A stretch of DNA of 64,000 nt from positions 496,001 to 560,000 of the forward strand of contig NW_026781864.1 in assembly GCF_031769215.1 (NCBI RefSeq), given 5' to 3'. Under the pieces are notes generated by a model. The model did no database searches, was not told the origin of the DNA, and saw nothing but the letters and a program-made list of their open reading frames with translations. The stretch's first letter is position 1, and every line of letters starts with the position of its first letter. Below, one piece after another: positions 6,510-58,200 of the stretch. This stretch comes from Ylistrum balloti. Its lineage: Eukaryota. The position numbers and the translations under genes were made by a program.

Positions 6510-9500
6510 ATGTCTAGTACTAGATTTATATCAGATACTTTCAAGTACGTGAAGAGGCCATCGTCGAATCAAGTATTGAAGCGATCTGACCTGGTCAGTC
6601 ACGATGATGGTAAGTTTCAGGTTTCGTTTCAATTTGCCTATAAAGAGGTAATTATCGGCTCATCAGTTTCGGACCACAGACGCTTTGGAAATAGAGACAC
6701 ATCGGCTCCAAACTTCACCAGCCCAATACTTCTTGGCCCGGTACTCTTTCGATTAAGATACCTTGGACCCTCAATCAAAATAAAATAATAGAAACGAAAC
6801 CCACATACTCGCTTAGAATCAGTACAGTATCGTCTGGATATCGGTTCCGGAACGTTATGTATTTAGGAACGACTATTTGGTCGTGCTGTATCGTATGGAG
6901 GGGGAGTGAGAAGGATTGGAACTCCGAGAAGAGACCAAAAAGAAAACTATACAAACATCGGGGGAATATCTCTATCCCGTAAGGGGCCAACCATGGAACA
7001 GAAAAACAAGAAAGATGAAAAACAAAACGATTAGCAGAAATTAACACCAAACAAACATTCTACCACTTGAACTGGTAATATAGATAGTATTCCGAATAAA
7101 CAAGATAAGATTTAATGATTAAAAGGCCACTTCTTTTTGCAATTGTTTGGCTATGGAAGTCCAAACATGCATGCCGTATATTGGAAAATTATGATTTTTG
7201 AATTATTACGTTTGATGATACATTTCTGATTTTATCAAACTAGCAAGTTTATCAACAGATATGGCTTATTTGAGGGAAAAAGGACTAACAATTGAAACTT
7301 TAACCTAATTCCCAGTAGAACAGCTGCACACATCAACACAGATATCCACCATTTTCATAACAATTCATTTAATTTACTACATGTGTATTTCTGGGTCACA
7401 TTTGGCTAACTCAAGCATCTCTGTGACTCAGAGATGTCATCAGAAACGAAAGTGCAGTCATATGTCTGATACACATGTCAGTCATTTCAGATCGAATTTG
7501 AGGTCGTATCTGCGGATGTTTTTTTAGAAAAATACTGATTAGTTTGGAAATAAATCTTACAGTATGAACACGTTTCAAGTTGTTTATGTATCTATTTGGT
7601 AGTGGTATTTCATCAACACAGTGTAGCAAGCCAAAAATAAATGTTAATGGGTCCGAAACTTATGTGCAATGGATAGATTTTTAAAAGCTTGAATCAAAAC
7701 AAAACAAACCAAAATCCTTTAGATTAAAGACTCAAAGAAAGGAAAGAGCAATATCAAAGCTTGTAAAATTTAGAAATTAATCAAGGCAGGGCAGACAGTT
7801 TAAAGGGCAGCAGGAGCTCTATTCTTAGCTGGATCGCCCCACAGCCTCAGAATCAAACTAGTCAGAATTGTTTTGAGGTTCTTTCTACTTTTGTAATAGG
7901 AAGGATTACCAAAAAACATCGTGCTACTGCTGGGGTTGGAAATAGTGGCCCTTCGGTCTCTAGCCTCTCAACTAAAGGGAAAATCTGACTAGCTGCAGAT
8001 TCAAACTAGTCCGAATTATTCTGATGTTCTGTCTTCTTTTGAGAGTCATGAAAAACACCCTACCACTGCTTTAGTTGGAGCTAGTGATCTTCTGGTCTCT
8101 AGCTGAACACACTACCTCTGAACTAAAGGGAATTTCCCACTAGCCCAATTAGTAAGGCGACCTGTACTCTCAACTACTCTCATCTTCTACACTACTCCCT
8201 CCTTCACAAAGTCTTTGACCCTAAAGCCATAACAACCCAAGTTCAATGTCTCCGAAGAAACATCTCGGTCTCCTATAGCTTCTACCCTTTAAGTGGTCAA
8301 CAGCACCAAATCTGTAATAGGAAGTAGTAATGAAATCACCATGCCACCACTGAAGTTCGAATTAGCGAGCCTCTTCTACACTTTACACTGTATGTCAAAA
8401 TAAAAAAGTCAACAGAACATCAGAATGAATCAGACTACCTTAGAACCAATCTATATTAAAACAATTTTATAACAGAGAGCCCAGATACTAAATTTTATCA
8501 AATTCAGGAAACAAAACTAAGATAAAATTTAAAGTCACCCAATTAAATTTTTTATTTATTTGTATTATTTCATTTCAGATAAACCTTCATCCAGTAAAAC
8601 TGACACGGATGAACTGTTTCCTGTCAATATCGTAAAGCACAGAAAAAGTGATAAAGACTTCCTCCGTGAATTTGACATGAACCTTGAATTTGGACCATGT
8701 ATTGGTAAATATACACACAGCTTAAATGACTAGGAAATGATACACAATTCAAAATTATCGTATTACTTTTAAGGGAAGAGAAACATACGCTGCTGTTTGG
8801 CTTATAATATGGCAATTGTAACAGAGGTCATTATTTATTTCAATGCCTCTGCTAGGAATCAAACCCATGACCCCTGACTTACTAGTCTGATGCTCAACCA
8901 ATCGAGCTAAAGAGAAGTTCTCTCTAGCCGAGTGGTATATTGTGGCTAGTATTTTACCAGGGTTACAGGTGATATTCTCAATCCAGTATCAACTTCAATT
9001 ATAATATGGCAATTGAATAAAATTATGCCGCATGATATTGTTTCCTAACTTTACTTGATGAAGAATGTAACGTAAATCCCAATCTCCATTTAAAAGAAAC
9101 GTACTGACAACTTCAGAAGAGTCTCCTGTCATAATCTCTTGTCAATGCCTCTCTGTGATGTCTGTTGTTATATCGATCTGCTTTTATGAATACCTTTACC
9201 ATTTGGAGATAGGCATGATAAATTTTCAGATATATACATTAGGAATCAATATGAGAAACACTTTAGATAACCCATGCAGAGAAACATTATAAGTCTTTAC
9301 AAATGCCTTGACCATAAATCCTGACCTGAATCTATCAAGAGTTTGACTAGAAAATGGACAGAGCTTTTAAATTGTCAGTGGTTGAAAGGGGCGTTTTTAT
9401 TTGCTAAGAACATGTGAAGGACTGTTTCAAACAAAAATTTAGCAAGTTTTAGCTTTATTTTAGTTTTGTTGATATTTGGATAATTATTTTTTATGCGTAT

Positions 9501-18753: not shown

Positions 18754-19672
18754 ATGCCTCTTAGTCGTAAGCGCTACACAGTGAAGGACAAGATCGACAT
18801 CGTCCACTGGTTTCGAGGGAACGGCTCGAACTATTCCGCCACACAGAGGGAGTTTGGAGTTGACCGGAAACTCATCAGAACATGGAACCACGATTACGAC
18901 AAGCTACTTATGAACTCCGGTGGGAAGACAGGATCCCTGAAGAAGATTGGTGCAGCGACGCCACCAAGGTCTATGGAGCTTGACAACGCCGTGTTTGAAT
19001 GGTTCGTGGAGGAGAGGGCCGAGGGACGAGCCGTGACTAATTATATGCTACAAGCTCAGGGCCGCATCATCGCCAGCCAGCTTCGAGTTGATGGTTTCAT
19101 CGCATCCAACGGCTGGCTACGCAGATGGAAGAAGCGCTTTTCTGTCGGGATTCGCCGCGGGACCAACGACGCACAGAAACTGCCATCAGATTATCAGGAG
19201 AAGATCGCCGCCTTCCACGACGCCATCCGCCACCTCCGCCAGGCCAACGACTATACCGCGTACAACATTACCAACATGGATCAGACTATGGTCCGATTTG
19301 ACACGCCATTCACCACGACCAACTCCATGATCGGCGAGAAGACTGTCCGTATCACGAACAGCGGCGGGGCCAAGAAGGGTTGTACCGTAGCACTGTCAGC
19401 CACAGCGTCTGGTCACAAATTCCCAGCTTACATTATCTTCAAGGGATGTATTAAAATGTATTTTACCATGACAATCTTATACAATACTGATTTCCAATTA
19501 AAACAATTAAATAGATTAAATAGATAATTTTATTTATATACCTATAATTGGACATTAGTAAATAATTGAGTAGTCTTGTGTTATTTATAATTACCGTACA
19601 TAAAACAGGGACTAATGATATGATTCCCTGTATAAACAATACGCTATAATTACCAGGTATTTTTATTTCATT

Positions 19673-19711
<39 letters not shown>

Positions 19712-19965
19712 GCAGGAGAAATCTGGTGAGCTGTCGTCCCGGATCCAGGCTTCACTTCGGATTCCTCCGAATGTTCGAGTATCCGCTTCCCAGAACGGAT
19801 GGATGACGGCTGCCGAGGTGCAACGCTGGATTCGGCGAGTGTGGGGCCCGAACACTGACGATGTCCGCAGACTGCTCACTCTGGACAGTTACCGTCCACA
19901 CACCTGTCCGTCTACCCTTGAGATCTTCAAGCAGTATGACACAGACATCGTCACCATTCCCGGAG
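18754..19965 (+). pseudogene. Intron-containing pogo/Tigger-family transposase (CENP-B-type HTH + DDE_1), apparently defective
   Basis: Exon 18754-19443 (MPLSRKRYTVKDKIDIV...FGVDRKLIRTW...ASNGWLRRWKKRF...NMDQT...HKFPAYIIFK) and exon 19716-19965 (EKSGEL...QNGWMT...LLTLDSYRPH...IVTIPGG). Intervening donor reads AAG|ggatgt; the expected next exon with QPLD was not found. Confidence 0.85.
19668..19710. repeat. (TTA)n microsatellite in the transposase intron
   Basis: ttattattatt... run directly upstream of the acceptor at 19715. Confidence 0.9.
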
Positions 19966-21438
19966 GTATGTATATAATATTACATTTTAACATGGAAGTG
20001 CGTTTATTCAGACAATTACGGTACATAAAGCAATGTTCTGCAGACCCCGGAAATGAATGTAGGTCATGTATATATAGAAACATTATGATTCCGTCATAAT
20101 AAAAATCTTGGGGAATTCCCCTTACTTGCCTGCATAGTCCATGATCATACATGCATGTAACTTAGTTCTAGAAAAACCTTAAAAGTATGCACATGAAAGA
20201 CAGATGGAAAAAGAAATCACAATCATCGAGGTCAGTATGTTCTTGTTATGATTTCTGATTAGCACTAATTATGAAATTCAGAGTTGGTTGCAAAGATATC
20301 AATGTTTACACAGTAGTGTAGTCCAAATTATCCTGACATTTTCTCGATCTGGAATTGACGTCGTTTATCGATTTAAGACCGTTATTTCAAAAATCGAAAG
20401 AAAATTACACTGTTCACACTGTCAGCACGTAAATACACGTAAATTATAATACTATTCTTTATACAGTTTTTTTACATCTAATTCTTCATTTGTATTAAAA
20501 GTCGGCATTCACTGGTGTGCCTTTTGTACTATGAGATGAGAAAGTCACATATTTATGTAAAAACGAATTTGTACGTGAAGAATATAATGATATAACACAT
20601 ATATGTAAGTATATGACACCATGCGAGTATTTAACACAATGTGAGTATATGACAATATGTGATATATATGATAATACAGTTCGTTATAATGTATTGTCAC
20701 TGTTTGTTCGCCAGTGTTCAAATTCAAATTCTGTTGTGTATTGACAAAGAAACTACTCCCCGTGTGTAGATATTTCTCGAACAATAGTTGCGGAGAGCTT
20801 TGGAGAGTCACGACATGGTTGACTTACTTTGACGTAAACAGGTTCGACAAAAATTCACCCACACGCTAATATATCTTGTGTATCCGGCTGAAAAACTCAG
20901 CCAGAACTGTATAACAAGTTATATTGATTTAAAAATTAATTTAAACATGTTTTAAAACTCTGCAAAGTTAACGAAAAGGTTGAAACTGATCGATTTGCTC
21001 AATTACATCGTCTTCCTGGTCCAGGGAAATCGATCTCGTAGCCCCGTTCGAGGAAAATTGAACTCATGTAGCCTTTTCGAAGGAAGTTGACCTCATGTTC
21101 GAGGTTACAGCAACAATAAAGGTAAATTTAATGAAGTATTTCGGCTTTGTCCTTTTTGTTATATTCAAACCCATTTTTTTTTAAATTTTGATGATCATAG
21201 AAATTTCAGTAATTACTCATTAATAGGTCATCGATTTCACCGAGATTGCCCTTAATTGTGAATAACAGTATTTTGTTTGCAATGATATTTACTTTTTATA
21301 AACAAAGGCGATAAAAGCAAGTCTAATTTCAGTGATTTTTTTTTCTATTTCATCAACTTAAGTGATAGGAACAATATGAAATTCCCCTAGAATAACGACT
21401 GTGTTTCCGTCGCATTGCTGTAATACCAAGCTGAAAAC

Positions 21439-24400
21439 ATGGCGGATCGAGAAAAACGTGAGTTTATTTCTTTAGTAATTTGTAATGTACTTTTTAATTC
21501 AATCGAATGGCGGCACGGCTTAGAATAAACAAAAGTACTTGGCGTTCGTCCGAAATTATCAGATATGTGAACATTGCGATGTTTATATGATTGTGTGGCT
21601 TATGCCTCTCCCGATATAGATTTCAAAATGTAGGCCCTTATCATCACAGGTGTATGATAAAGTTAAATTTCTGGTTTTACTGTTTCAAATTGAAATTTGT
21701 ATTAAAGGGCGATAATCACTTATGTGTCATATGCTAGATTATTGGACACAAAATAACACCCGTATTGATTGCCTATGTTTACAGGAGTAGTCTTTAAGAT
21801 AACAAACTACTTCGGTAATCAGGGTATCCAAGTAGGAGACTGCAACACCATGCAGATAGCGGAAATGTTATCCGGAAAAAAAGGTGTGTATTTCATCATT
21901 ACATGTTAAGGAAGGATTCGTGTTCAAGATAAACTAGTACGGGGGTTATTCGACACAGTCACCTGCACATTCCCGACAATATGAAGTGGGTGTCCTTTAT
22001 TGTTAAAAAATGAAAAGAGATAAAAAAAATTCCTAACCCTAGTTTAAAATCTCCACGATCATATGTTACTGAGCTACACCATTGCTATTGTTTAATGCTG
22101 TTTTTGAAAGATTGCATAAGGTATAGGTGGGGTTTCCTTTTTCATGACGCAAGCACAGTTCGTTTTGTAAACAAAAATGTAATAATATCTCCACGAAAAG
22201 ATAAAGTTATTGGACGCTTTATCTGCAGGCACGATAACATCTTGAAGTGTCGATTTGTATTTTGAAATTCATTTTCCAGCTAACGGACGAGGTTTCACGA
22301 AATTTATAACCTTTCAGGATAACCTCTCGTAGCTTAACATTTTGAATAATGCTTTAATCACCAGTTTATTTGTATAGTTACGTTTTAATAGCACCGGTAT
22401 TAACACTCCCTGAATATTTTTCCAGGAACCACACGGGAAGATGTTCACATAGATAACCTTCTATGTGGTGCACTTAACAGTATTCTAAACCCGAAACGTT
22501 CCAAGTCTCCACATCCAATGAATCTGAACGTGTTGGAAACGAAATTTATAGAAACGTTTGGAGATCATTTACCGGAGGGAAAGAGAACGTTCACAAGTAC
22601 AGCTGGCATGTCGCTCCAATCATTCCTTCAAAAGCATGGGGATTATTACGAGACACACTTTACATCAAAGGGAAAGACAATGGTGCAACAAAGACTATCG
22701 ACATCCGAGTCGGAAGAGATTCCCAGTGACAACAGTCATACACACGCTTGTAACAGCCGTAAACAGGCTATGAGGCTCGAGAAAGAAAACGGTGGCGCTT
22801 TGCAGAAGGAAAACATTGTATACGATCCCTTGAATGACAAAAACAGAAATACGGAAGAAATAAGTCAAATTGACAATGATGCTGATGGGTGGCAAACAGT
22901 TTATAGTAAAGGACATAAAAAAATGATAAAAGCAACGAAACAGAGTGTCAAACCCGAAAGTGAAAGGAAACAACAAAAATATGCAGATCAAGGACACTGT
23001 TTTATAAAACATCTTCTCGAGAAAAAAAGCAGTCACGATTTGAAGTTTGTGCCATCGGATACCATATACTTCCAGAATTACCTCTTGTTTACCATAGATA
23101 TCATCAGTATGTGGAATACCCCAAAGGAGGTCCCCTCGTACATTGTCCTTGGTATTTTCGATAATGGCACAGATGGGTTAGAGTCTTACACCACCACAGG
23201 AATGAAAACAAGTCACACAACTGAGCATTTCAAAAAAATTTTCTTGTATGACTGCGTGGCCGGCAGTATCCCAGAGTTCTCGTATACTGAACTTTTTCTA
23301 GGAAACGATGTAGTAGGCGTGATTGAAATATGCAACACTGGAACGAGTCCATCTCCATGTGTGATGAACTGCAACCGGGAAAACATTGCTATTGCGACAC
23401 GCGAAGGAGACATGTGGATTCGAAAGAACTCAACGACTATTGTTTGCAAGCCTACAGATCACATATTTGCACAGGTATATCGATGGTTTGCAGAAAGCCA
23501 TGCAAATACCTCAAATAACGTGCAAGGTTTCGTTAATGAAAAATGTTCCATCCGAGAAACCGAGAACAAAGATTCGAACCCCATTGTTTATTCGCGACAG
23601 CCAAGTGCCGTTTCAGAAACGGACGATGGTTTGAAAGTATGTATTTCAATGGATCAGATGTTAGATGCTGTGAACAATTTTCGCAAGGGTCACTTCATTC
23701 TCTTGGCCGGTGATATATCCAGTCAATCCAAAAACATTGATGCAATCGCATGTGTACGCTGGCTGGCTGTTTTTGATTTCGATCCTTACAGCAGAGACCG
23801 AGGACTTCTTTGTTCAAATGAGGAACCCTTGTCCAAAACGACATCCCTTCATATCACCACATGGAAGTCAATCAACAAGCCTATATCGGAGTACGGAACT
23901 AATTGGTGTTTTATACGTGGATCAAGAGATGACCCTGAAAGTCGAGAGTGTTTCCAAGAATCAGACGATCTGCAGAGTTGGAGTCGAAAAATAAAACCGT
24001 TCATTGATCCTTACTTGAATGATATACAGGATTTCGTTGCAGATTACACCGTGCTGACCTCGATCGTTTTATGGCCTGAAGACGAAAGGATGCTCCCTTA
24101 CATTCTGAAGATGATAAATAAGTTAGATGAAAACATTGATCCTCCTCCAAAACTCGTTGTCGTCCTTGAGTCAGAACCTCGGACTGAAGCCGGAAAAAGA
24201 CTCTTCCGTATGTTTTGTGACGAACAGAACGAAAACGTTACTTTCGTTCGAATGAAGTTAAGCGACGTTCTGGATGGACTGAGTCATGCGCTTAAACAGA
24301 ATGACAATACACATGAAGTCAGATTTGATCTACCTGTAACCGAACAAAGAGATGTCTGTGTATTGGAGAGAGATGCATCATGGCTGCGTGAGCATTTGAA

Positions 24401-27260
24401 CGTTTTGTTCAAATCCAGCCCGTTTGTACAAAGGGAGCACGACATGGAGTTCCTGCAGGAAGAAAGCGACAGTTTCTATCGTGGTGGAACACTTCATTGG
24501 CGGACTTGGTACAGTTGTGAAGCAGGTCATTTTGATATAGAGAGAGATATTTACAGAAACGCCAAAACAGTCATTCAGACAAATATTCAGAAAGAGAAAT
24601 CAGGTCTGGTGACACTGTGTCATGCCCCTGGTGCCGGAGGTACAACACTTGCCCAACGTCTCGCCTGGGAATTCCATGAGAAAATTCCAACAGTACATGT
24701 AAGGAACAATAGTTTCAGTCTCCTCGATATTGTCCCAAGGATTGAATTCATTTACAGTAAAACACGGAAACCAGTCCTGGTACTTATTGATGGAGAAGAC
24801 GAGCAAAAGGTGTTTCATCTAATGCAGTATCTAAAAAGAAGTTGCATTACCATCATTTTGTTTGTGAAGAGGCGTCTCTGTAAGCCACAAGTTAGCAAAG
24901 ATGACACCGAACAGCTGTGGTTAAGTGGCATCGTTTCTACGAAGGAAGCAAAACAGTTGACCCTGAAGTTGTCAGTTCACTGCAAGGATGACGAAAGAAA
25001 GAAAAGGAATTTGTCTAGATTGTGTAAGGAGACCGAGCAAGGAAAACGGCACCATCTGATCAATTTTGGTCTCACTGTTTTTCTGCATGAGTTTAGGGGT
25101 ATATCGTCCTTTGTACAAGGCTACTTGCCCGTCTCGGGACACGTAGAGTCACCAACAGCTGACCAGAACATATTGCTCTTTCTAGCAATTGCGTATTTCT
25201 ATGGGCACACATCACTTCCTTGTCAGTTCTTCAGCGAACTTCTCCACTTACCAGCAAACTATTGTATAGATCTAGATGATTTTCCACAGTCGGTCCAGTC
25301 TTTTGTTGTCGAAGACGAAGGAGAAGGTAAGAAGTCAAACATTCGGATTTGCCATAATCTGGTGGCAAAAGAAATCCTTGATCATGTTTTGTCACGAGGA
25401 AGAAATCCAAAAGACTCAATACAATTAGGACTTTCTGAACCAGCACGACATAAACTTGCATCTATTTGCTTAGAGTTTATAAGATACGCAAGCAGAAGGG
25501 AAAAAAGGGGTTCAATTTCGTCAAATACAGTTGTACACTGCTTGAGACAAATTTTCGTTGTACGGGATACTTTGGATATGAATCAGGGATCCGAACATCT
25601 GACGAGAAAGACTCTCATTTCAAAGGTTTTAATGGACATTAGATCTTCACCGCCATTGTACAGTGAAAGGTTAGAGGTTTTGAAGAAACTCGTTCAAGCG
25701 TTTCCTGATGATCCAAGTTTCATAGCACATCTTGGTAGGTTTTACGCAAACTGTCTTCCACATGAAGAGAAAGAGACTGAGAAATGTTTTCTTAAGTCTC
25801 TTGAGTTGTGTGAAGCCAATACCAGAGGAACCAGTGATGGGAAAATAAACGACAGAACGAGGCTCCCTATGATGTACATATATCATATGTATGGCATGTT
25901 TCTACTGAAACTGATCAAACGTGAAACCGGAAATGGTACCTTCGGCGCCGTTACGGGTAGCTCGGAATCAGAAAAAGCATCTAGAAACATAGATGAACTT
26001 CTTACTTTAGTTAAACAAGCATGTTCGCTGTTTGAAAAGTCCAGGATGTACACGCCTGTTGAACAGGAAAGTGGCTATGGTTATACCGGTGAAATTGAAG
26101 CTCGTCTTCATTTTTGTGATTTTCTTCAAAAAGAAGAATCTTTTCTCAGAAGTACATTTGAGATCACCCGTGAGAAAGTGAATATCTTTGTCAGAAAAAG
26201 TATCCCGATTATAGATCAACTTATAAACGAATGCACGAAAGAGTCACCTCGTCAAAAAGAAATCGGCTACTTCATTAACAAGTACACCCGATGGTACGAC
26301 CACCTGTTTAAGGGAAAAGTTTTCACTTTGGAACAGATGGAAGACTGCTGTGACATTGATTCATGTCGACTGGGAATCGCTTTGACAAAAATTAACCACA
26401 AATCAGGGACCAGAAGTAGCGTCAATATCATGGACGATATCAAGAACAAGGAAGACATAGAGAACATAGTGAAATTGTATGAAAAGGTTTTTGAATTGGT
26501 CGATGTCTGTGATACGTACAGAGAGCAAAAGGTTTTAGAAACGAACCTTATTGATTGGTTGAGAGCAATCAGACACAAAGAAATGACCACAGAATACAGC
26601 ATCGAGCATGTTCTTGGACTTGTAGCGAAAATCTATAACATTGTATCATCACCAGTTGTGAAGTTTTACATCTTCGTCCTGAAAAGTTTGTTAGGGTTTG
26701 GAATTTGCTCAGAGTCAAGACAGGTGGATACCAGTGTCCTTTATGATGCCAAGCAACTAAAGACTGATCTCAAAGCTTGTGGAAATGACGTGATGAAGTC
26801 CAGATACCCTAGGGAATGGATAGGGAATTCTGGAAATGGAATCAAGCTTCTAATCCCGGGATTTCAGTGCACGTCCTTGATGCCAGAACACAGGTTAACT
26901 AGGCATTTTCCACTGCTATATGTCTTCAAGGGATCAGTGTGTCATCCAAACAAGAAGAGGCTCGCAGGATTTATCAGTCTAGACCTTGGCGAAAACACGT
27001 GCCCGGTGGAAGTCTTCTTCATACCTGATATTGCAAATATGACAGGCTCCCAGCATGCAGGACGTAGGGTGGAGTTCACGCTCGCATTCAGTATTGAAAA
27101 TGGATATGAGGCTTTCAATGTGACTTCTTTGAAGAAATATAAATGCATACACTTTCCATGTGGGGCTAGTGTTGAAATCACCTCTGCTGAAGAGTTTGGT
27201 GTTTGCTATGCTTGTAAACGGGCGGTTTACAGAAATGACTTCCTTGAAGAAGATAAATGA
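21439..27260 (+). CDS. SAMD9-like STAND NTPase, 1650 aa, with N-terminal RHIM-like motif in place of SAM
   Basis: Exons 21439-21457 (MADREK, donor C|gtgagt), 21785-21883 (phase 1-1), 22426-27260 (open from the acceptor through the track ATG at 22518; in-frame TAA at 22401-22403 lies upstream of the acceptor); total 4953 nt. SAMD9-family motifs: HDLKF...SMWNT...YIVLGIFD (AlbA_2), RWLAVFDFDP (SIR2-like), HAPGAGGTTLAQRLAWE (Walker A variant, 24621-24650), VLVLIDGED (Walker B), IAHLGRFY (TPR-like), VFFIP...VEFTLAFSI (OB fold). Confidence 0.88.
21785..21883 (+). other. 99-nt symmetric (phase 1-1) exon encoding a RHIM-like motif
   Basis: tttacag|GAGTAGTC...GGAAAAAAAG|gtgtgt; translates (R)VVFKITNYFGNQGIQVGDCNTMQIAEMLSGKK; IQVG core at 21826-21837. 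Confidence 0.8.
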
Positions 27261-29815: not shown

Positions 29816-31129
29816 TTAATGTTGTAAACAATTTACTAATTTATGTTCCTTCAGTAGCTAGACACTAAACTGATCAATTCATGTTCATAGTTAATATGAA
29901 TTGATCAGTTAGAATTGATAAAAAAATCCAATTAATATTTATATTGGCTATGAATGACAAACATGGAAACAGTTTATACATAATATTTTATAAATACTTC
30001 AATCAATGCGATGCAATTCAGCTTTGAGTTTCATTTGAATAAATAAAAGAACCAAAATTCTAAAAATAGTTGGTAGCAACCTACAGTCAAGTCTTTGCAT
30101 TCATAGCTGATGTAAATGCCAACTTAAGCTGATAAGTGTTATAAAAAGGTTGATAGTACCCTAAAATCATGTCCTTATATTCATAGCTGATATAAATGCC
30201 ATCAAAAATTGGCTGTGTTAAACAGTATATTGCAGTGGTCAATATATTTTAACATCACCGATCATTGGGTAAAGTTTTAAATATTTATCAGATAAGATTT
30301 TGATGTTGAAATACTTTATTGTTATAGAGAGATGTTTTCTAAGAACATTTCTGCAAATATATAAACAGTATTAGTGCAATAGAAAGCTTTTCAAAAATAT
30401 ATTTTTACATATTTATCTTCAAAAGTTGAGATGTAAACTGCTAAGTTATCATTTACCAAAACATTCCAAGCCAAGTTCAGTACATGAAACAGTATGACAG
30501 TTTTTCAGTTGTCTATCTTAAAGTTACCTAGGGGTATCATGGTTACCCATTACAGCACTCACCAATGATGATGTTCTTCAGTCAGATCAGGATAACATTG
30601 TCATATAAGGTTGGTGAGACCAATCCTGACATTCCATTGTTTAATTCACTTTTACTTTTTTCTACTACTATACTTAAGAAATGCATTCTGCTACAAATAC
30701 TTTAAAATATTAAGGAAAATTTGTGGTAGAAAATGATCTACTTCTTCATCAAAACATATTCAAACTGCTAAAAATACTTTAAAATATTACGGAAAATTTG
30801 TGGTGATCTACTTCCTCACCAAAACATATCCAAAGGATTTTAAATTCTTGCTATCTCGTATTCCAAGATTAATTGGAAATGTTTCTTTGAGAATAAAGAT
30901 GGGGAAAATACATAGTATAATGTACACGGTATAAAGACATGTGTGTTGAACATTAACACAAGGTAAGCACTACAGTTGGCTCTACAATGGACGGAGATAG
31001 GTATATAGTAGAACAATACTACATCTGTACACACTGGTAATGATAACAAATTCTCCAAATGTAAACTTGATGACATAAAATGTTTATGAATCATAATAAA
31101 TGATAGAAATGAACACGTTGAGACTTTCC

Positions 31130-34100
31130 TTAATAATTTGGATCTTCTATTTGTGTTGTAGCTTTTCCAAATAAATATTCTTCAAATTTAGAGAGCTGCT
31201 GAATGAATCCTCTGTTTGGTCGAACTGTTGAGCAGCATTGTGTGAGATGACCATAAGCCTCCTGAAACCAACAAATTACAGGAATATTGATATCTACCTG
31301 AGAGTATGCAAATTGTGCATGTATACCCGAAAATATCTATGAAATGATTATACATGTATAATATTACATGATCATAGTGGTAAAATATGATAAACTTCAT
31401 AATACATATAATTTGTAGTATATGACAGTTTGTATATCAAAATGAAGAAAACTATCATGTTACCTTACAGTTTCCTCAAATTCCCACACCAGATATTAGA
31501 CATTTTAACTCAACCCCTCCCCCTCCATTTCCATCCCTCCCAGACATGTCAAAATATCAAATGTCAGATGTAGGAGATGGAAACCCCTTGGGCTAGGTGC
31601 AGCAAATTTTGTATGAATATGGGTTTCAAATCATTGTTGAATTCTTCTATAGTTGTATATCTTAAAATTTACACATAAATTTAATAACTATTCAGGGTTT
31701 TCCATAAGAGCCGGTCACCGGCCAATTTGACCGGCTACTTTGATCATTTAGCCGACTACACCAATACAGTTCCGTAATAATGTTCTGTACACGACTACAC
31801 GTACACGGCAGGCCAGCCTCCTACTTTCACTACACAGCCTGCTACTAACAAAATTATGGAAAACCCGGACTATTTAATAAAACAGACTTCCAGGCATGAC
31901 ATTACCTTAAGTGTCCATTTGTAGTGGTGCATGAGGTAGGCAACAACCACTGTGGCACTACGACTGATCCCAAGGGAAGAGAACACCAGCACTGCTTCAT
32001 TCTTCTCCTTGTGTGTGTCTGTAACAAAATGTTACATATAATGGATTACCTCCCCTTAATGAAATGATACCTAACTTTCAGGGATAATAAATGGTACCTT
32101 TATAAGGGCACAAGTAACTTTCCGATACAGAAAGTGATATAGTATTTTTTTTTTTTCAAATAATCTTTATTAATTTTACAACAATTGCGAAGCAAGTTTT
32201 TCCAACTTTTGTTGGCTCGGAACGAAACACATGAGGGGTCTTAGTGTGGGAGGAAACTGAAGTACCCAGGGAAAACACACATGGTTGAGTAGGTGACCCC
32301 ATACCTTTTCACATCCATTCCGGGAATCGAACCCCAGACCGCTAGGTGAAAGGCGAGAGTCTTACCACTGCACCACTCGATTATTTTAAAAAAAAAAGAT
32401 ACAGTACTCACCTATGAAAGCACAAGCATGCTGTAGTTTACTGTAGAGGTCAGCTTCTGCCTCATCATTGACCTGTAGGTGTAACAAATGGGGTCCAGGC
32501 TCTGAAAAGCTGTACACAAACATATCGGTAATATACTTGTTGGCATATCTCTCTCCAGTACATTATACATAAAACAATATATCCAGAAGTCACTTTTATT
32601 AAAATGCAATTGACTTCAATTTTGAATAATTGCAAATCATGAATCTAGAATAATTTGTTGTTTTTCAATGTGAAAAACTTATCATAATCCTGATTATGAA
32701 TAACAATAAAGATCAGATTACAAAATAAAAAGTGATGCTCATAATGATAGGGAAGTTAAAAAAGAATATGGTTATAATCTACTCCATTTTTAGGCAAAAG
32801 TATAACCAGTTTCTTATAACCACTTTTAATTCCACAGCCTACCAACAATCTTTTGACATCCCTTTTGGAAAACTGGAAGCTCCAAATTTGTATTAACAAA
32901 TATCAACAAAATTTGCTGTATTAACAAGTACCAAATATTTGAAAAGTACTTATATTAAACCTTCTTTAGCTTAGTAAGGTTCTAAGAGTAAAATGCTGTA
33001 CTATGTTAATACTATGTTACTATGTTTTTACTAGTACTTGATTTTGAAATTCATGAGTAAAAGGAATGCTCCATAATATTGAGGTGAAAATTTTGAAAGT
33101 TTAAAGCTTCCAAGCAGAGTGTGCTTGTAAGTTTACCACTCTAAGTCCCACCATTGTCTTGTTTTAGAAAGTATCAACAGACCAAACATCAATTTTATAA
33201 CATAGTTTTTATGTCAATAACTCTACATAGGAGAAAAACTTTCATATATCTGACTCCATCAAAAACGTCTTACAATGTTTCTGACTCCAAACAGCAGTTG
33301 ATATGACCTTTGATCTTTAAGTCTTTCTGAATGTATCTGGCATTGCCTTGTCTCCAGTTTCCCAGGTATAGAAACCCATGTATGATCTCAATAGGGTAGG
33401 ACTTCATCTCATCCATTTCCTGTCAAATCACAAAAACAGACACCAGTATATACTCTAGGTACAGAAACCTGTGTACATATCATATCAATGAGACAGATAC
33501 AGTCTGCTCAAAGAAAATACAAAAGGCCCAAGCTCCTGAACAGTGTGAACCCACAAATGGAAACAATTGGACAGAGGAGTCTTACCTTATGACTCTTCAC
33601 TCCAAGATGGGTATTTGGGTATAAAGAAGATTTTTGAAATTTCGGTCAATTTGAACATTTTCTATCATGCCCATCATCCCCCAGGGATCAGCCAATGTAA
33701 AGCATCTTCAGACCCTTCCATCCATGAAGAGTATTTGATTCTAACAAATTTGAGTATTAAGTAGAAGATTTTTGAAATTTTGGTCAATTTGATCCCTTTT
33801 GGTCCTGCCCATCAGCCCCTTGGGGTCAACCAGGGTTAGCGTGTGCATGAAATCATACTGTCGTTCTATATGCACAAACAATTCTAACCAAGTTTGATCT
33901 TTCCAAATTGGGCTCAAAAATGTAATTCCTATAAAAACTATTGTAAATTTAACTCCTTCCTTAGGGGGAAATGTGAGATCCTTGGGCCGCAAAATTTTTA
34001 ATTTTGGTAAAACACCTTCAGACCCTTTCATCGATGAACAGTATTTCATTCTAATATATTTGGGTATTGAAAAAAGATTTTTAAAAGATCAGTCAATTAG

Positions 34101-37100
34101 ACCCTTTTTGGCCTCGTCCCTCAGTCCCCTAGGTGCTGGGGACCATACAATTTACAATTTTGGTTTAGCCCTTTGGCCATGGAAGGTTTCTACCAATTTT
34201 TATTGAAATCGGTTCAGGGTAAAATGAACTGGCTAAGACAACATGAACATTCTTCATTTACAGTACTGACTATTGAATATATAATCAGTGAGTAATATAT
34301 GATTCATCAGATTATTTCCATATACAAAGAAATTGTGTCATTGAAATATGAAGAAAATGTAATCAAGTTACACAGTAAATTTCGCTAAAATCAATTATAA
34401 TTATGATCACAAGAAACTGAAAAGTCTGTAATTACTAATTACTCTTGAATACTTTGAAACTTGTAATTGATTATGTTTACAGGATTACAATTTAATTGCC
34501 TCATGCCTGGAGCTATTTTTTATCATTTTTTTTTTTTTTGTTATCAATATCATCAATACAAACCTTTGGCATGAACATAATTTTCTGTGTTCTCAGGAAT
34601 GGATACAGTGCTGAGAATTCCTCATAACCACCTGTTTACAGTGAAAAAAGCATGCTCTTGTGTTAAGGTGTCAGACTTCTAAACATGCAATTGTTACAAC
34701 AAGTTTTAATACTAATTTACATCTAGGATATAGCATTCCTCTCTGTTAGTTGTTTTCTTATTCATACAGAAAGATTAGATATGTAAATTTCCTTGTACTT
34801 GATACCGATATTTCAACCCAGCATGCTTACCTGTGGCCCCCTGAACGTATTGTAAGGGGTACGTGTAGTTATTAATACACAGTGTAGTTTTTATCAATAT
34901 AAATACCTGTTTCACAATGTCTACTTATCTTGGTGTCTCAAAAAACCACTGACTGTCAGTAAAAATATCTAACAACTGTAGTTACCAGTAATAATAATGT
35001 GGATATGAGATTAAGTCTTACTGGCATTAATCAACAATCTGTTGTAACAAGATAATTAATATATAGGATATTGATATTAGTTATTAGAAACATCTTATTA
35101 GGCTTGACTTCTGTAAGTTAAATGTTATGTGTTATAGAACTTACCTTTTAGTATTTTAACTCTATTTCTACTTCCTTTATCCCATAGCATCATCCCACAG
35201 TCTATGGCTTGACCTAATAATTACAAAATTTTCAAATCTCTGATATAATTCATAGATTCGTAGTATTTCATGAGAATGGATTATAACTCTGAAATTGTTC
35301 CTGGTGTGATATCAAGTGAACTCTTTTATATTTAAGAATTATGTTGTATATGAAGGAAATGAAATCACACATGACATTATTGTCCAAGTTCAAATCTTTT
35401 GGATATATATCTAATACTCACCTCCTTCACGGATTGTTTTTGTGTTACTGTCATAAACAACGACATTTTGTTTACACTCCAGTTCAGCATCATAAGGAAC
35501 TCTAAAAGACCCTTCAGCATCCTGAAAAAAAAAGTAAAGAATTTACTTATAAATGAAGATAAAACAGAATATTTATCTGGCATCATGTTTATATGTTCTG
35601 CCTTTAACCCTAACCTTAAGCTTATTCTGATAGCATCTACATACATACCAAACTTATATTTTGGGAGGAACTTAGCCGTAGACAAATATGGTGGTCAATA
35701 TGATAATCGTCATAGGAAAAATCCTCAAAATACCATCCAGATTATCTTGTGAGACATCCAACAGGTACAGTACCTAACAGTGACCCATTACTCAAATGAC
35801 ATGTATTTTTACATCTACAATTGCAGATCTGAATTTCTTAAAATAATCACCAACTATCTCCATTATCAGTTTCTGAAAAGTAGGACAATACACATTACTT
35901 GAAACAAAATTGACAATTCTTTGAATTTTTTACTTCATTTCTTTGTCCTTGACATGAATTGTTGTATAAATAACTGCACCAGTCACTTCACATCATTTTT
36001 ACATAACAAATGTTAAATACGGGTAAATGTAATTAATTGTGAATGCCAAAACATTAATATCATACCTTTGGTGCTTTCTTAGCAGTTACAACATGACTTT
36101 CATTATATTCATTTTTATTCCTTGCATCTGAAAGTAACAAAATTAATAATAAATGAATGTGTTTCAAAAGGAATCAGAAAGTCTAGGATACCTGCTACTT
36201 TAGCAGCTTAATAGCTACAATTCATAAGCAGCTTAATAGCTACATTTCATTAGCAGCTTAACAGCTACATCTCGCATATAGAAGGTCTGATCCCTATGTG
36301 CAAGAGAGAATGAAATTAAAATGAAAAGGCTAATATAGGATAATGAATGATAATATTAGGAGCATAGTAAATAAGCATTCATATCTTGAAAGTTAAAAGG
36401 TCTAACTCTGGACCTCTCAGACTAACAACAATGCTTTTTGCATTTCTGAGTAGCAATTCAACCACAAACAGTATCACTGAAAACATAGACCCTTTTGCGA
36501 TAATCTTCTTTCAGCACTTTTCATGTCAAAGATATTGTGCTAAAATATGATTGCACAAAGAGGAATACCTCCTATGAATTCCGATCAAAAGAGCTTTCTG
36601 AAATTTCTCCATTTCTCAAAATAGTCTAAAACTTCCCTTTTTTCCACAATATTACCCAAGTTGTAGATTAACTCATTAAGTAGGAACACAATTTGTTTCT
36701 ATTGTTAATATGGTAAACACACTTAATTTTGCATAAACAAATTTGAGCCCATAATCTTTTTTTGTCAAATAAGTGCAATGATAAATTCATGCATCCAAGC
36801 AGTGTATAAAACTGCAAATATTGAAATCATGTTTAAGTGTAATTCAGTGCAAAAAGCACTTGATATAGGCTACTGCTAAAATATGTTCATTTATAGTAAC
36901 AATTGTTCAAAATTGATAATATGCTAAAATGTGACAATTCAAAATATGTGGTCCTGCAAGTATTATATAATAAACTGTCAAAAAATCAGGTTTTATTTCA
37001 TGTCATCATAAGCTTTGTAATCTTTGTCTCCTTTGGTTCAATGACCTAGAAGGTTTTGTTTACATGAGTCTTATTTAAAACTCAAACTGTAATTCACTTA

Positions 37101-55200: not shown

Positions 55201-58200
55201 ACCAACCACCAAGTATTTTAAGGCACAAACAACAGCTTGAACAAGCAGGAGGAGGGAATTGGAATGGAGAGGCAGAAGGTGAAGGAGAATGTTGGGAGGA
55301 GGAATTAGATGTAGAAAGCCATGGGTCAGCAACTAACAGCAGCAAGGAGAACAGTGTCGAAAAAGAGGTATCATATTTTATCATTTGTGTATTAAAAAGT
55401 GTTGAGTATTTATTCTTTGTGTAGAAAACGAGGTAAAGTTTTGAATTGTTTGTGTAGTAAAAGGTAGAAAAAAGTAAACTATTGATTGTTTGACACCTGC
55501 TGGTAATTTAGAGGCTGTAATAGCTCAGTAGATTGTCGATCTTTGATCCGTTAGGTGAGGACGTGTGTAGCTCAGCAAACCATGCGTAGTGCTGTTTGTA
55601 TTTTCAGCTAAATTGAACCATTCTGTACCGTTGCATTTGTTTTCTTGAGCAAGATACTTAATACCAATTGCTGTTGCTGTCAACAGCAGAAAATTGACCT
55701 CCTGTATATTGTTCAGAGTGGTAGCCACCAGCTACTATAAAGAAATCCTGCCTCAAAATGACTCTTACTGTGATAAGTGATAAAGCAGGCAAATGAATTT
55801 AAACAAACAATACTATTATTTCATAATTTGGAATTATTTCTATATGTCTAAAAGTACAGTCTAGTGTATTAACATACATGATCATATAAGGATATAAAAT
55901 TGATGGATGGACAGTAAATGGAAATGCTAAACATGTGTCGGTTTATCAATAAATTTAAGTGACCAGCTCTTTAAAGAAATATCAATGAGAATCTGTCAGA
56001 TTGATAAATCCTGGAGTCCTGTCAGTATTCTGATGTATAAATCTTCACATGAATTGTAACCAGGCAGTACATGTATTTCAAAATAAGATGAATATTATAA
56101 TGCAGCTTTGCTAACGTTAAAATATATATATTATTAATTGTATAAGAAAATATTGAAAGAAAAAAAAATGATTAAAGAATTATAGAATTTAAATGCCATA
56201 AATATGTTTGAACAATGAATAGATATAGTCTATGTATGTATGAAATGTAAAAAATGTTATGAAGGATAAGATAATAAAAGATAACAAAGTGTTTAGTTTA
56301 CTCGAGTTTACAAGAGGATAGGCTAGTAAACTTGTACATTCAAAGGATGAATTAGAACCAGTGAATTGAATATGACAGGAAATGAAATGATTTGAGAATT
56401 TATATCATGTTCATTCATTAACACTAACTTGGAATAAGGTCACAATATAAAGTGTATTTCTTTTTCTGTAAACAACAGATTGATGAGGTCCTCACAAACA
56501 TTCGTAATCTGCAAGTGCAGTCTGAAGATGGACTGGTCAGTACTGGAGACGCCAAGAAAAGATCCAAGTCAGGGAAAAGACCAGAGATTCAGCGATATAT
56601 TCCAAAGGGAAAACTGATAGAGCAAAGTCAAAAAGACTCTGAGTCAGAGGAGCTTGATGATCCCGCAAGAATTCCATCAAATGTTGCCTCTCCTCTGTTT
56701 GATGACAATACCTCTCTGCGTAAAATAGATTTTGGGAAATGTTCACCCATGGATGTCAAAATCACATTTGTGAATCAAACTTCCTCACCTCAGGGATCAA
56801 AGCCTGATGAGGCCTCAAATACACCTCAGAGAGCTGGAAGTGAGTCAAGGTTAAGTGGTGGTCAAGGAGAATCTCAAACTGGTGGTCAAAGATTGAGGTC
56901 AGCTGGAGTTCAAGAGGAGTGTCATTATCAAGATAAGAACAGAACTGACAACCACAGTCAGAAATTTGCAAGAGATAAACGACAAAATCAGAGAGGACAA
57001 TTTATGGGGGACAGAGGAGGTAAACGTGGAGGAGGGTTTGGGAGGGGACAGAATCGAGAGGAAGGATATGGCACATGGCCAAGAGAAAAAGGAGGAGGTA
57101 GAGGAAATGTCCAAAAGGAAAACAGTCCACCTAGTGGCGAAAATTGGGATGTGGAATTACGGATTGTGGAAAAGGATGATATTGAACAGAAAGAAGACAA
57201 ACAGAATCGAAATAATGTCAGTACCTCTCAAGCCAATCCTGTTACTGGATCAGAACCGCCAAAACCACAAAGAATTAATCAGCGGCGTCCACGTGATCGT
57301 CCCGTAAAACAGACAACTGTGTCAATTATTGATGCTCCGGACGAAGGTGAAGATGGCAATGGTAACCACATACCAACCATGATCTTTGAACGAAGGAACA
57401 GTAATTCATCAGTAACAGGCAGCGGGCAAGGTGGTAATGGAAATCTGAAACAAAAGCCTCCCAAAGGTCAACCTATGACCAAGGGACCCCCTAAAAGGTA
57501 CTCACTTTCAACCATGCGTCGACAAAGGACTGGCAGTGTCAGCAGTGACGTAAGTACTGCCAGTGACTTGAGCATTGATGATGAAACAACAACCAGGATT
57601 CTGGATTGGGATAAGGAAGTAGAGAGAGAAATGGCCAAACAAGTCCAGGATGAAACAATGAAGTTAAAGGAATTTCTGGAAAGACAAGGGGATTTCCCTG
57701 GGATGGACTTTGGAATGGGTTCTTCTGATCAGAAACAACCAGACAGAATGTCAGAATCAGGTAGTGAATATGGTATATATCGTGAGAAAACTAGTGAGAG
57801 ACAATACAGACCCTCAAGAGCCAAAGAAAATCAATACAACGAGAATAAAAATCGTAACTCAGGTTCCCGCGATAGACATGATGGCAGTGATCAGTGGTAC
57901 AATGAGTTACCCAGGAGTAGACGGAGAAATAGACGGAGTTCCCTAAATGGTCGACACAGTAGAGACTCTAGTGTGTCCAGTGTCCAGAGTGTTCAGAGTT
58001 ACCATGGAGATGAAGGAGAGAAGATGTACCACAGTCTAAGTCTGCCACGAAAAGGAAGGCGACGTAGGAGGAGTAGTAATGCTAGTCTCAAGGATATTAG
58101 TTCTAGTCGTGAAGCTCTCAACAATCCAGAAAATCTCAACCTCAAGATAACTTTTGCTCAAGATCACAATGAGAAACGCCAAGTCACAATGCAAGGACCT

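What the first reader, a model, noticed from the sequence alone, without database searches (positions are those of the whole stretch)
21439..27260. SAMD9-like STAND NTPase carrying an N-terminal RHIM amyloid motif: candidate amyloid-signalling immune receptor
Seen: two small exons upstream of the 1580-aa ORF splice in frame and encode MADREKRVVFKITNYFGNQGIQVGDCNTMQI; the large exon has the SAMD9-family motif series (AlbA_2, SIR2-like, GAGGTT Walker A variant, TPR-like, OB). Established: RHIMs have a (I/V)Q(I/V)G core followed by xxNx(M/L) (RIPK1 IQIGAYNYM, RIPK3 VQVGDNNYL) and polymerise into signalling amyloids; fungal and bacterial STAND/NLR receptors use N-terminal amyloid motifs to trigger death effectors; vertebrate SAMD9/9L are antiviral tRNA-cleaving proteins with an N-terminal SAM domain. 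Inference: here SAM is replaced by RHIM, so ligand-driven STAND oligomerisation could nucleate a RHIM amyloid to recruit a downstream adaptor or cluster its own AlbA nuclease. I do not recall this combination being described, but cannot exclude it.
Basis: partly seen in the sequence, partly recalled or inferred. Interest (0 to 1): 0.9.

Follow-up and report, generated by a model that had tools for sequence, protein, structure and literature searches.

The report
RHIM-tipped SAMD9-like immune receptor, scallop
A scallop gene for a large SAMD9-type antiviral switch protein starts with a short RHIM-type motif, the peptide that mammalian cell-death kinases use to build signalling amyloids, and the same layout recurs across molluscs.

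Summary
The window is from the scallop Ylistrum balloti.

**Gene model.** Both small exons have orthologues in Pecten and Mizuhopecten, with the same phase and the same downstream neighbour gene. NCBI's own model fuses a transposon remnant to exon 2 instead, which is probably an annotation error.

**SAMD9 body.** Sequence profile and predicted fold both match human SAMD9: AlbA_2 tRNase-like, SIR2-like, P-loop with GAGGTT, TPR-like and OB-like parts.

**The motif.** KITNYFGNQGIQVGDCNTMQI does not reach Pfam's RHIM threshold. A profile of 13 molluscan N-termini finds only RIPK1, RIPK3 and viral RHIM chains as its ten best PDB hits. All Q-type motif bearers fall in one clade spanning abalone and bivalves.

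**Limits.** Amyloid formation, a partner protein and transcription in Ylistrum are untested. No paper in the searched library links RHIM with SAMD9. Close precedents are RHIM-NACHT proteins in amphioxus and CARD/Death-SAMD9 in invertebrates. I rate it a new variant of a known kind. The scan holds four other unchecked RHIM notes in this genome.

The parts
21439..21457 (+). Coding exon 1 (MADREK + 1 nt, phase 1), donor GTGAGT, Kozak A-3/G+4
   Evidence: It is homologous to Mizuhopecten RefSeq exon 1 (L008:6001-6025) and to Pecten L001:6688-6712.
21785..21883 (+). Exon 2: 99 nt, phase 1-1, so it could be skipped in frame. It encodes the whole RHIM-type motif.
   Evidence: The same junctions are used in NCBI model P0001 and in Mizuhopecten P0079. 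It shows no variant in a second individual.
21796..21858 (+). RHIM-type core KITNYFGNQG-IQVG-DCNTMQI (tetrad at 21826-21837, Asn +6, Met +8)
   Evidence: The region is disordered in the AF2 model.
22426..27260 (+). Exon 3, the 1610-codon body of the SAMD9-like protein, including the stop codon
22446..22700 (+). LOTUS/OST-HTH-like winged-helix domain
   Evidence: AF2 pLDDT is above 90. Foldseek matches TDRD5 3s93 (TMt 0.72), TDRD7 3rco and Oskar LOTUS.
22956..23540 (+). AlbA_2 / SAMD9 tRNase-like domain
   Evidence: Foldseek matches human SAMD9 7ksp and rabbit SAMD9 9o0d at E about 5e-4, and Schlafen N-domains.
23640..24347 (+). SIR2-like region (approximate bounds)
   Evidence: It aligns to human SAMD9 by phmmer and by the family profile.
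24441..25397 (+). STAND P-loop NTPase. Walker A HAPGAGGTT is at about 24621-24650. Walker B-like VLVLIDGEDE follows.
25425..26789 (+). TPR-like helical solenoid
   Evidence: AF2 pTM 0.83. The best Foldseek hits are human SAMD9 cryo-EM 9zjs/9zjr (E 1e-9 to 5e-8), then TPR proteins.
26814..27239 (+). C-terminal beta-rich (OB-like) domain with four invariant Cys
18754..19970 (+). pogo/Tc5 transposase remnant in two pieces (18754-19386 and 19716-19970). It is not part of the gene, although NCBI's model fuses it to exon 2.
   Evidence: Depth is about 5 times that of the flanks in a DNA run.

Best explanation
Shown.
- This is an intact three-exon gene for a 1650-aa SAMD9-family STAND NTPase.
- Its architecture is: short disordered N-terminus with a RHIM-type motif on its own 99-nt exon, LOTUS, disordered linker, AlbA_2 tRNase-like domain, SIR2-like, P-loop, TPR-like, OB-like.
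- It belongs to a subfamily found in abalone and in most bivalve orders, in which a RHIM-type motif sits 32-40 residues before the LOTUS domain.

Inferred mechanism.
- In the resting monomer the motif is unstructured.
- The C-terminal sensor part binds a ligand, probably viral or nucleic acid, and the NTPase oligomerises. This crowds several N-terminal motifs together.
- The crowded motifs nucleate a cross-beta (RHIM-type) assembly.
- That assembly recruits other RHIM proteins of the host, such as the CARD-RHIM adaptors reported in bivalves, and so couples to caspase or NF-kB-type death signalling.
- The protein's own AlbA_2 nuclease shuts down translation at the same time.

In this reading the motif does what CARD, Death or Pyrin domains do in other invertebrate SAMD9 proteins and what SAM does in vertebrates.
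For: Gene model and orthology.

SAMD9 body.

RHIM relation:
- The scallop-only profile hits RIPK1 RHIM peptides and a viral RHIM at E 0.05-0.09 against the whole PDB.
- With the 13-sequence profile the top 10 PDB hits are all RHIM chains, down to E 1.9e-4. The next, unrelated, hit is at E 1.5.
- Pfam PF12721 is passed at the same position by Solemya (23.2 bits), Sinanodonta (25.1), Potamilus (24.5) and Tegillarca (20.4), against a cut-off of 20.

Not chance: the pattern [IVL]Q[IVLC]G..N occurs 9 times in the first 100 residues of 59 family proteins and 0 times in the other 83,090 residues. Shuffles give 0.05.

Spacing to the LOTUS domain is constant.

One clade (SH-aLRT 96), on a tree built without the N-terminus, holds every protein with a Q-containing tetrad.

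Gene models that appear to lack the motif have it on unannotated upstream exons in 4 of 4 loci checked.

Transcript-like contigs of two relatives carry the motif and the body in one ORF.

The motif is disordered in AF2, as RHIMs are.

Literature:
- Invertebrate SAMD9 proteins carry CARD, Death or Pyrin at this end (PMC5445408).
- Amphioxus has RHIM-NACHT proteins, with RHIM where CARD-like domains usually sit (PMC4262963).
- Bivalves have CARD+RHIM proteins, and a bivalve iridovirus carries a copy of one (PMC12452177).
Against: - The Ylistrum, Pecten, Mizuhopecten and Argopecten motifs do not hit Pfam RHIM even at E<=10.
- A profile built without scallops scores Ylistrum only 6.8 bits and Pecten 9.8 bits. 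These are no better than six-frame noise unless the position is taken as given.
- The loop before the tetrad is longer than in RIPK1 and RIPK3, and the residue at -8 is Thr rather than aliphatic.
- The tetrad Q is not conserved in the second scallop paralogue (VMIG, VLVG, VIVG), in oysters (IVVG, EQHG) or in Mya (VVIG).
- Exon 2 evolves fairly fast, with pN/pS about 0.4-0.6 against Pecten.
- No second motif lies in the 64-kb window.
- No other protein with a close copy of the motif appeared among 1.84 billion representatives.
- There is no RNA evidence for Ylistrum.
- Nothing here tests amyloid formation.
Confidence: 0.55

Rival explanations
1. Self-assembly only. The motif is a working cross-beta or beta-zipper module, but it only glues copies of this receptor together. 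That would replace SAM polymerisation in vertebrate SAMD9 and raise the local concentration of the AlbA_2 nuclease. No separate RHIM adaptor would be recruited.
For: - No partner motif lies nearby.
- No near-identical motif was found elsewhere.
- The protein already has its own effector domain.
- Vertebrate SAMD9 has a self-associating SAM domain at this end (PMC5445408).
Against: - Other invertebrate SAMD9 proteins carry CARD, Death or Pyrin here, which are recruiting modules (PMC5445408).
- Bivalves have other RHIM proteins, and a bivalve virus copies one (PMC12452177).
- Mammalian RHIMs of only moderate mutual similarity still co-assemble.
Confidence: 0.25
2. Decayed relic. The scallop motif descends from a true RHIM but no longer forms amyloid. 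It is now a disordered tail, or an ordinary short linear motif with some other role.
For: - It fails Pfam RHIM.
- It scores low against the non-scallop profile.
- The tetrad Q varies in paralogues.
- pN/pS is 0.4-0.6.
- Oyster RefSeq isoforms without the motif exist.
Against: - The tetrad, Asn +6, Met +8 and Ile +10 are kept in all three scallop orthologues: IQVGDCNTMQI, IQVGDYNTMEI and VQVGDCNTMQI.
- From the tetrad onward the residues match human RIPK1 IQIGAYNYMEI at 8 of 11 positions in Pecten.
- Exon borders and phase are conserved.
- The exon is more conserved than the linker that follows it: 70% against 49% identity.
Confidence: 0.15
3. Not translated. Exon 2 is 5'UTR or a rarely used cassette, and the protein starts at the Met inside exon 2 (MQIAEM...) or further downstream, as in models P0002 and P0003.
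For: - Two database models start after the motif.
- There are no RNA data for Ylistrum.
- Exon 2 can be skipped in frame.
Against: - An ATG exon in the right phase is conserved in three scallop genera.
- The RefSeq Mizuhopecten model P0079 translates the motif.
- The reading frame through the motif is kept open, with synonymous changes, in Pecten.
- Many annotated homologues translate the motif.
Confidence: 0.05

Closest known systems
Vertebrate SAMD9/SAMD9L (antiviral tRNA-Phe anticodon nuclease, STAND NTPase)
   Same: The body has the same order of parts: AlbA_2 tRNase-like, SIR2-like, P-loop with the GxGGTT Walker A, TPR-like, OB-like. Profile E is 4e-33 over 600 positions, and both the N-terminal and C-terminal parts match by fold.
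   Different: There is no SAM domain. The N-terminus is a RHIM-type motif plus a LOTUS domain. Identity to human SAMD9 is only about 15-25%. The catalytic acidic and basic residues (E184, E196, E218, D241, K198, K214, R221 of human SAMD9; PMC12331169) were not mapped here.
RHIM of RIPK1, RIPK3, ZBP1, TRIF and herpesviral M45/ICP6 (Pfam PF12721)
   Same: The core is G-IQVG-D..N.M.I. From the tetrad onward the residues match RIPK1 IQIGAYNYMEI and RIPK3 VQVGDNNYL. The motif lies in a disordered segment next to folded domains. Profile hits run in both directions.
   Different: The scallop motif is below Pfam's cut-off. The loop between the first strand and the tetrad is longer. The carrier is a STAND NTPase, not a kinase or adaptor. 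Amyloid formation is untested.
Amphioxus (Branchiostoma) RHIM proteins with NACHT ATPase domains (Kajava et al. 2014, PMC4262963)
   Same: This is an animal STAND-type ATPase with a RHIM where CARD-like interaction domains usually sit.
   Different: The NTPase there is NACHT, not SAMD9-type. It has no AlbA_2 or SIR2 effector and no LOTUS domain. It is in a different phylum.
Invertebrate SAMD9 homologues with CARD, Death, Pyrin or FIIND N-termini (Mekhedov, Makarova and Koonin 2017, PMC5445408)
   Same: The family is the same, and so is the principle: a swappable homotypic interaction module sits at the N-terminus. CARD and Death versions were also seen here (P0036, P0060).
   Different: The module here is a short amyloid-type motif rather than a six-helix death fold. 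RHIM is not mentioned in that paper.
Fungal NWD2/HET-S and bacterial BASS NLR-effector amyloid signalling
   Same: A short amyloid-type motif sits at the N-terminus of a STAND receptor. The fungal PP and bacterial BASS3 motifs are held to be RHIM relatives (PMC12261475, PMC4262963).
   Different: No adjacent gene carries a matching motif. The receptor has its own nuclease effector. Templating onto an effector protein has not been shown.

Membership tests
RHIM (PF12721) | Core tetrad (I/V)-Q-(I/V/L/C)-G | tested here: met
   IQVG at 21826-21837. The tetrad is IQVG in Pecten and VQVG in Mizuhopecten.
RHIM (PF12721) | Score at or above Pfam's gathering cut-off (20 bits) | tested here: not met
   No hit at E<=10 for the Ylistrum, Pecten or Mizuhopecten peptides. 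The cut-off is met at the homologous position in Solemya, Sinanodonta, Potamilus and Tegillarca, at 20.4-25.1 bits.
RHIM (PF12721) | Flanks: Gly/Asn-rich loop and beta-strand before the tetrad, Asn at +6 and a hydrophobic residue at +8 after it | tested here: met
   G+3 and N+6 are invariant in 13 molluscan motifs, and M, V or I sits at +8. The loop is longer than in RIPK1/3, and position -8 is Thr.
RHIM (PF12721) | Detectable similarity to experimentally solved RHIMs | tested here: met
   Scallop-only profile: RIPK1 and a viral RHIM at E 0.05-0.09, 4 of the top 5 PDB hits. 13-sequence profile: the top 10 hits are all RHIM, best E 1.9e-4.
RHIM (PF12721) | Lies in an unstructured segment outside folded domains | tested here: met
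   AF2 pLDDT is below 50 over the motif, and the next confident domain starts about 25 residues later.
RHIM (PF12721) | Forms homo- or hetero-amyloid, with function lost on tetrad-to-AAAA mutation | not testable with these tools
   This needs ThT, EM or cell assays.
SAMD9 family (STAND) | AlbA_2 nuclease-like domain followed by SIR2-like and a P-loop NTPase with GxGGTT | tested here: met
SAMD9 family (STAND) | C-terminal TPR-like array and OB-like domain | tested here: met
   The AF2 model's best matches are human SAMD9 cryo-EM chains, E 8e-10.
SAMD9 family (STAND) | N-terminal SAM domain | tested here: not met
   There is no SAM. RHIM-type motif plus LOTUS sit there instead. SAM is limited to vertebrates and does not define the wider family (PMC5445408).
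SAMD9 family (STAND) | Catalytic acidic and tRNA-binding basic residues of the tRNase | not tested
   No residue-level structural alignment was available. The residue list is taken from PMC12331169.
NLR-effector amyloid signalling pairs (NWD2/HET-S, BASS) | Matching motif on an effector encoded by the neighbouring gene | tested here: not met
   There is one motif only in 64 kb, on both strands. None was seen in the flanks of L001-L003 and L005 beyond the receptor's own exon.

The most novel reading that the evidence does not exclude
Molluscs have an animal counterpart of fungal NWD2/HET-S signalling, built on the SAMD9 chassis. An ancient RHIM-LOTUS-SAMD9 receptor family, predating the gastropod-bivalve split, would oligomerise on activation and template a RHIM amyloid. 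That amyloid would recruit CARD-RHIM or death-domain-RHIM adaptors to trigger cell death. Bivalve viruses that carry captured CARD-RHIM genes would target this pathway. Alternative 5' exons, or in-frame skipping of the motif exon, would tune it.
Probability: 0.35. Interest if true: 0.85.

Novelty: new variant of a known kind. Interest (0 to 1): 0.68.

Why it matters
Animal RHIM signalling is known almost only from vertebrate necroptosis and the fly IMD pathway. Receptor-nucleated amyloid signalling by STAND proteins is known mainly from fungi and bacteria.

A RHIM-type motif fixed to the N-terminus of SAMD9-like receptors across molluscs would link these two fields. It would give SAMD9 biology a new output module. 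It would also offer a testable route to antiviral cell death in farmed bivalves such as scallops and oysters, which suffer viral mass mortalities.

There is a practical result as well. The motif exon is small and is often missed or mis-joined by gene predictors, so the architecture is under-counted in current annotations.

Tried and rejected
- Pfam on the Ylistrum and Pecten peptides gave no RHIM hit at E<=10.
- phmmer of the 32-aa peptide against the PDB found nothing.
- ESM Atlas feature searches with the scallop and unionid motifs gave only unrelated low scores.
- hmmsearch of the two-scallop profile against 1.84 billion representatives returned only three repeat proteins (LRR, WD40 and a tachylectin-like protein). 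They score through repeated weak stretches and I rejected them as false.
- A word-indexed search of the motif region among proteins of 1066-3391 aa found the query only.
- RNA evidence: the only run found (X1) proved to be genomic DNA, because its contigs run through the introns. It says nothing about splicing.
- A possible second motif at window 8293-8400 (SVIGSSNEITM) was the top six-frame hit of the non-scallop profile, at E 0.05. It lies in no gene-like ORF, so I dismissed it as noise.
- The large ORF at 56452-59406 is unrelated to the receptor.
- NCBI's transposase fusion is rejected as the true 5' end. The transposase is a broken, roughly 5-copy repeat, and three scallops share another first exon.

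Full report
**Source and gene model**

The big ORF is 100% identical to part of NCBI protein LOC132556822 of the scallop Ylistrum balloti. They join in frame to 1650 aa.

NCBI's model P0001 uses the same exon 2 acceptor and the same exon 2 to exon 3 junction. Upstream, however, it joins exon 2 to two pieces of a pogo/Tc5 transposase at 18754-19386 and 19716-19970. I think this fusion is an annotation artefact, for two reasons:
- The only sequencing run that holds the region is genomic DNA from another individual. In it the transposase stretch has about five times the depth of its flanks, so it is a repeat.
- The direct orthologue in Mizuhopecten has a RefSeq model (P0079) that starts MATSDQEKG-GVIVKIINYLGNQSVQVGDCNTMQIAELLSGKT.

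The three scallops share a homologous first coding exon, each in phase 1:

| Species | First coding exon and donor |
|---|---|
| Mizuhopecten | ATGGCAACTTCAGATCAAGAAAAGG\|GTGAGT |
| Pecten (L001:6688) | ATGGCTGCTTCAGGACCAGAAAATG\|GTAAGT |

The same Rhodanese/DSPc gene follows on the minus strand in all three species. No RNA reads were available for Ylistrum itself.

**The body is SAMD9-like**

- Pfam sees only weak nSTAND hits.
- phmmer finds human SAMD9 at E 2e-16, with HAPGAGGTTLAQRLAWEF aligned to HHPGCGGTTLAMHILWEL.
- A 34-member family profile aligns to human SAMD9 over 600 positions at E 4e-33.
- The AlphaFold model of the N-terminal 410 residues has a confident domain matching the SAMD9 tRNase/DNA-binding domain (7ksp, 9o0d), AlbA_2 and Schlafen N-domains.
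- The model of the last 611 residues (pTM 0.83) has human SAMD9 cryo-EM chains as its best matches (E 8e-10), followed by TPR proteins.
Model residues 41-125 (pLDDT above 90) match LOTUS/OST-HTH domains of TDRD5, TDRD7 and Oskar.

**Is the N-terminal peptide a RHIM?**

Direct tests on the scallop peptide are weak:
- No Pfam RHIM hit at E<=10.
- Nothing by single-sequence phmmer against the PDB.
- Nothing from the Atlas.
- Only false repeat-protein hits in 1.84 billion representatives.

Family context is what decides the question.

*Recurrence.* A search with the NTPase region gave 65 SAMD9-like proteins, mostly from molluscs. Their N-termini repeatedly carry the same kind of motif:

| Species | Motif |
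|---|---|
| Solemya | ININNCTGIQIGDHNQ |
| Unionids | ISNCQGLQ[LI]GN.NEM |
| Dreissena | VQIGNNNNT |
| Haliotis | VQVGSGNV |
| Argopecten | IQVGTENTM |
| Oysters (variant) | IVVGDQNVV, EQHGSNNTV |
| Mya (variant) | VVIGHSNII |

*Positional homology.* When the motifs are anchored on the tetrad, G+3 and N+6 are invariant. The distance to the LOTUS landmark is 32-40 residues in every case, and 34 in Ylistrum.

*Enrichment.* The pattern [IVL]Q[IVLC]G..N occurs nine times in the first 100 residues of 59 proteins and never in the remaining 83,090 residues. Shuffles give 0.05. These proteins are related, so the count overstates independence, but at least six lineages are involved.

*Pfam in homologues.* Pfam RHIM (cut-off 20 bits) is passed by Solemya (23.2), Sinanodonta (25.1), Potamilus (24.5) and by an unannotated upstream exon of the Tegillarca gene (20.4).

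*Reverse searches against the PDB.*
- A profile of only the Ylistrum and Pecten peptides, searched against all 177,635 PDB sequences, returns RIPK1 RHIM peptides and a herpesviral RHIM chain as four of its five best hits, at E 0.05-0.09.
- The 13-sequence profile returns only RIPK3, RIPK1 and viral RHIM chains in its top ten, best E 1.9e-4. The next hit is at E 1.5.

*Caveat.* A profile built without scallops scores Ylistrum 6.8 and Pecten 9.8 bits. That is no better than six-frame noise unless the position is taken as given. The scallop motif is therefore a diverged member, recognised mainly by position and by its core.

From the tetrad onward it reads IQVGDCNTMQI in Ylistrum and IQVGDYNTMEI in Pecten, against IQIGAYNYMEI in human RIPK1 as printed. 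AlphaFold leaves the motif disordered, as expected for a RHIM.

**Distribution**

- A tree built without the N-terminal columns places every protein with a Q-containing tetrad in one clade of 31 (SH-aLRT 96). The clade spans abalone and bivalves. Other clades carry CARD, Death or HEPN_DZIP3.
- Two members outside the clade (P0037, P0050) have M-type variants.
- Clade members that seem to lack the motif all start inside or after the LOTUS domain.
- In all four such loci with enough upstream DNA I found an unannotated motif exon with AG/GT borders: Pecten L001, Ylistrum paralogue L002, Pecten paralogue L003 and Tegillarca L005.
- Longer RefSeq isoforms in oysters and Mizuhopecten carry the motif.
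- Two transcript-like contigs hold the motif and the body in one ORF, with an upstream in-frame stop.
- The motif exon is 99 nt (102 in Pecten) and phase 1-1, so skipping it would keep the frame. Oyster databases list isoforms with and without this region.

**Mechanism**

Shown: the architecture, its conservation, and the motif's relation to RHIM.

Inferred: activation and oligomerisation of the STAND module crowd the N-terminal motifs and nucleate a cross-beta assembly. That assembly either recruits other RHIM proteins (my preferred reading) or only clusters the receptor's own nuclease.

Support for recruitment is indirect:
- Other invertebrate SAMD9 proteins carry CARD, Death or Pyrin at this end (PMC5445408).
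- Amphioxus has RHIM-NACHT proteins (PMC4262963).
- Bivalves have CARD+RHIM proteins, and a bivalve iridovirus carries a copy of one (PMC12452177).

Against it:
- No partner motif lies in the window.
- No close copy of the motif was found elsewhere.
- The tetrad Q is replaced in several lineages.

**Novelty**

- No paper in the library links RHIM with SAMD9. Seven papers hold both words, and their titles and abstracts, which are all I read, concern other subjects.
- The two SAMD9 evolution papers do not mention RHIM.
- No paper holds both SAMD9 and LOTUS domain.
- The principle has precedents: a swappable N-terminal adaptor on SAMD9, and RHIM on an animal STAND ATPase. I therefore rate this a new variant of a known kind.

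The scan's own notebook lists four other unchecked RHIM-like notes in this genome. I used them only as leads.

Noticed in passing
window 18754-19970: A broken pogo/Tc5 transposase (HTH_Tnp_Tc5), at about 5 times flank depth in a DNA run. NCBI's model LOC132556822 fuses it to the SAMD9-like gene, which is probably a chimeric annotation.
   Followed up: yes
window 22446-22700: A LOTUS/OST-HTH-like winged-helix domain lies between the RHIM-type motif and AlbA_2. It is conserved through the molluscan clade. No paper in the library holds both SAMD9 and LOTUS domain.
   Followed up: partly
window 21785-21883; P0070 vs P0012, P0081 vs P0017: The motif exon is phase 1-1 and a multiple of 3, so skipping it keeps the frame. 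Oyster RefSeq and Logan records include isoforms with and without the motif region.
   Followed up: partly
L001:7579-7680, L002:9452-9649, L003:7473-7595, L005:6093-6230: Unannotated upstream exons encode the RHIM-type motif in Pecten, in the Ylistrum and Pecten paralogues, and in Tegillarca. The public gene models there start too late.
   Followed up: yes
L002 (same Ylistrum contig as the window, JAUZWB010000455.1): A second SAMD9-like paralogue (LOC132555930) has the tetrad VMIG. Its orthologues read VLVG (Pecten), VIVG (Mizuhopecten) and IQVG (Argopecten), so the Q is not fixed in this paralogue.
   Followed up: partly
window about 27144-27215 (protein residues C1573, C1578, C1593, C1596 of the exon-3 product): Four Cys are invariant across 34 family members at the extreme C-terminus, spaced like a zinc ribbon.
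   Followed up: no
window 22955: A second individual (run X1) carries an in-frame 3-nt insertion (GAT) in the disordered linker before AlbA_2. It also has coding SNPs at 22815 and 23435. Exon 2 shows no variant.
   Followed up: no
window 56452-59406: A 984-aa low-complexity ORF rich in Ser, Arg, Gln and Gly repeats. It has no Pfam hit and no similarity to the receptor.
   Followed up: partly
window 31109-34713 (minus strand): Exons of a Rhodanese/DSPc dual-specificity phosphatase gene. It is syntenic with the gene downstream of the Pecten and Mizuhopecten orthologues.
   Followed up: partly
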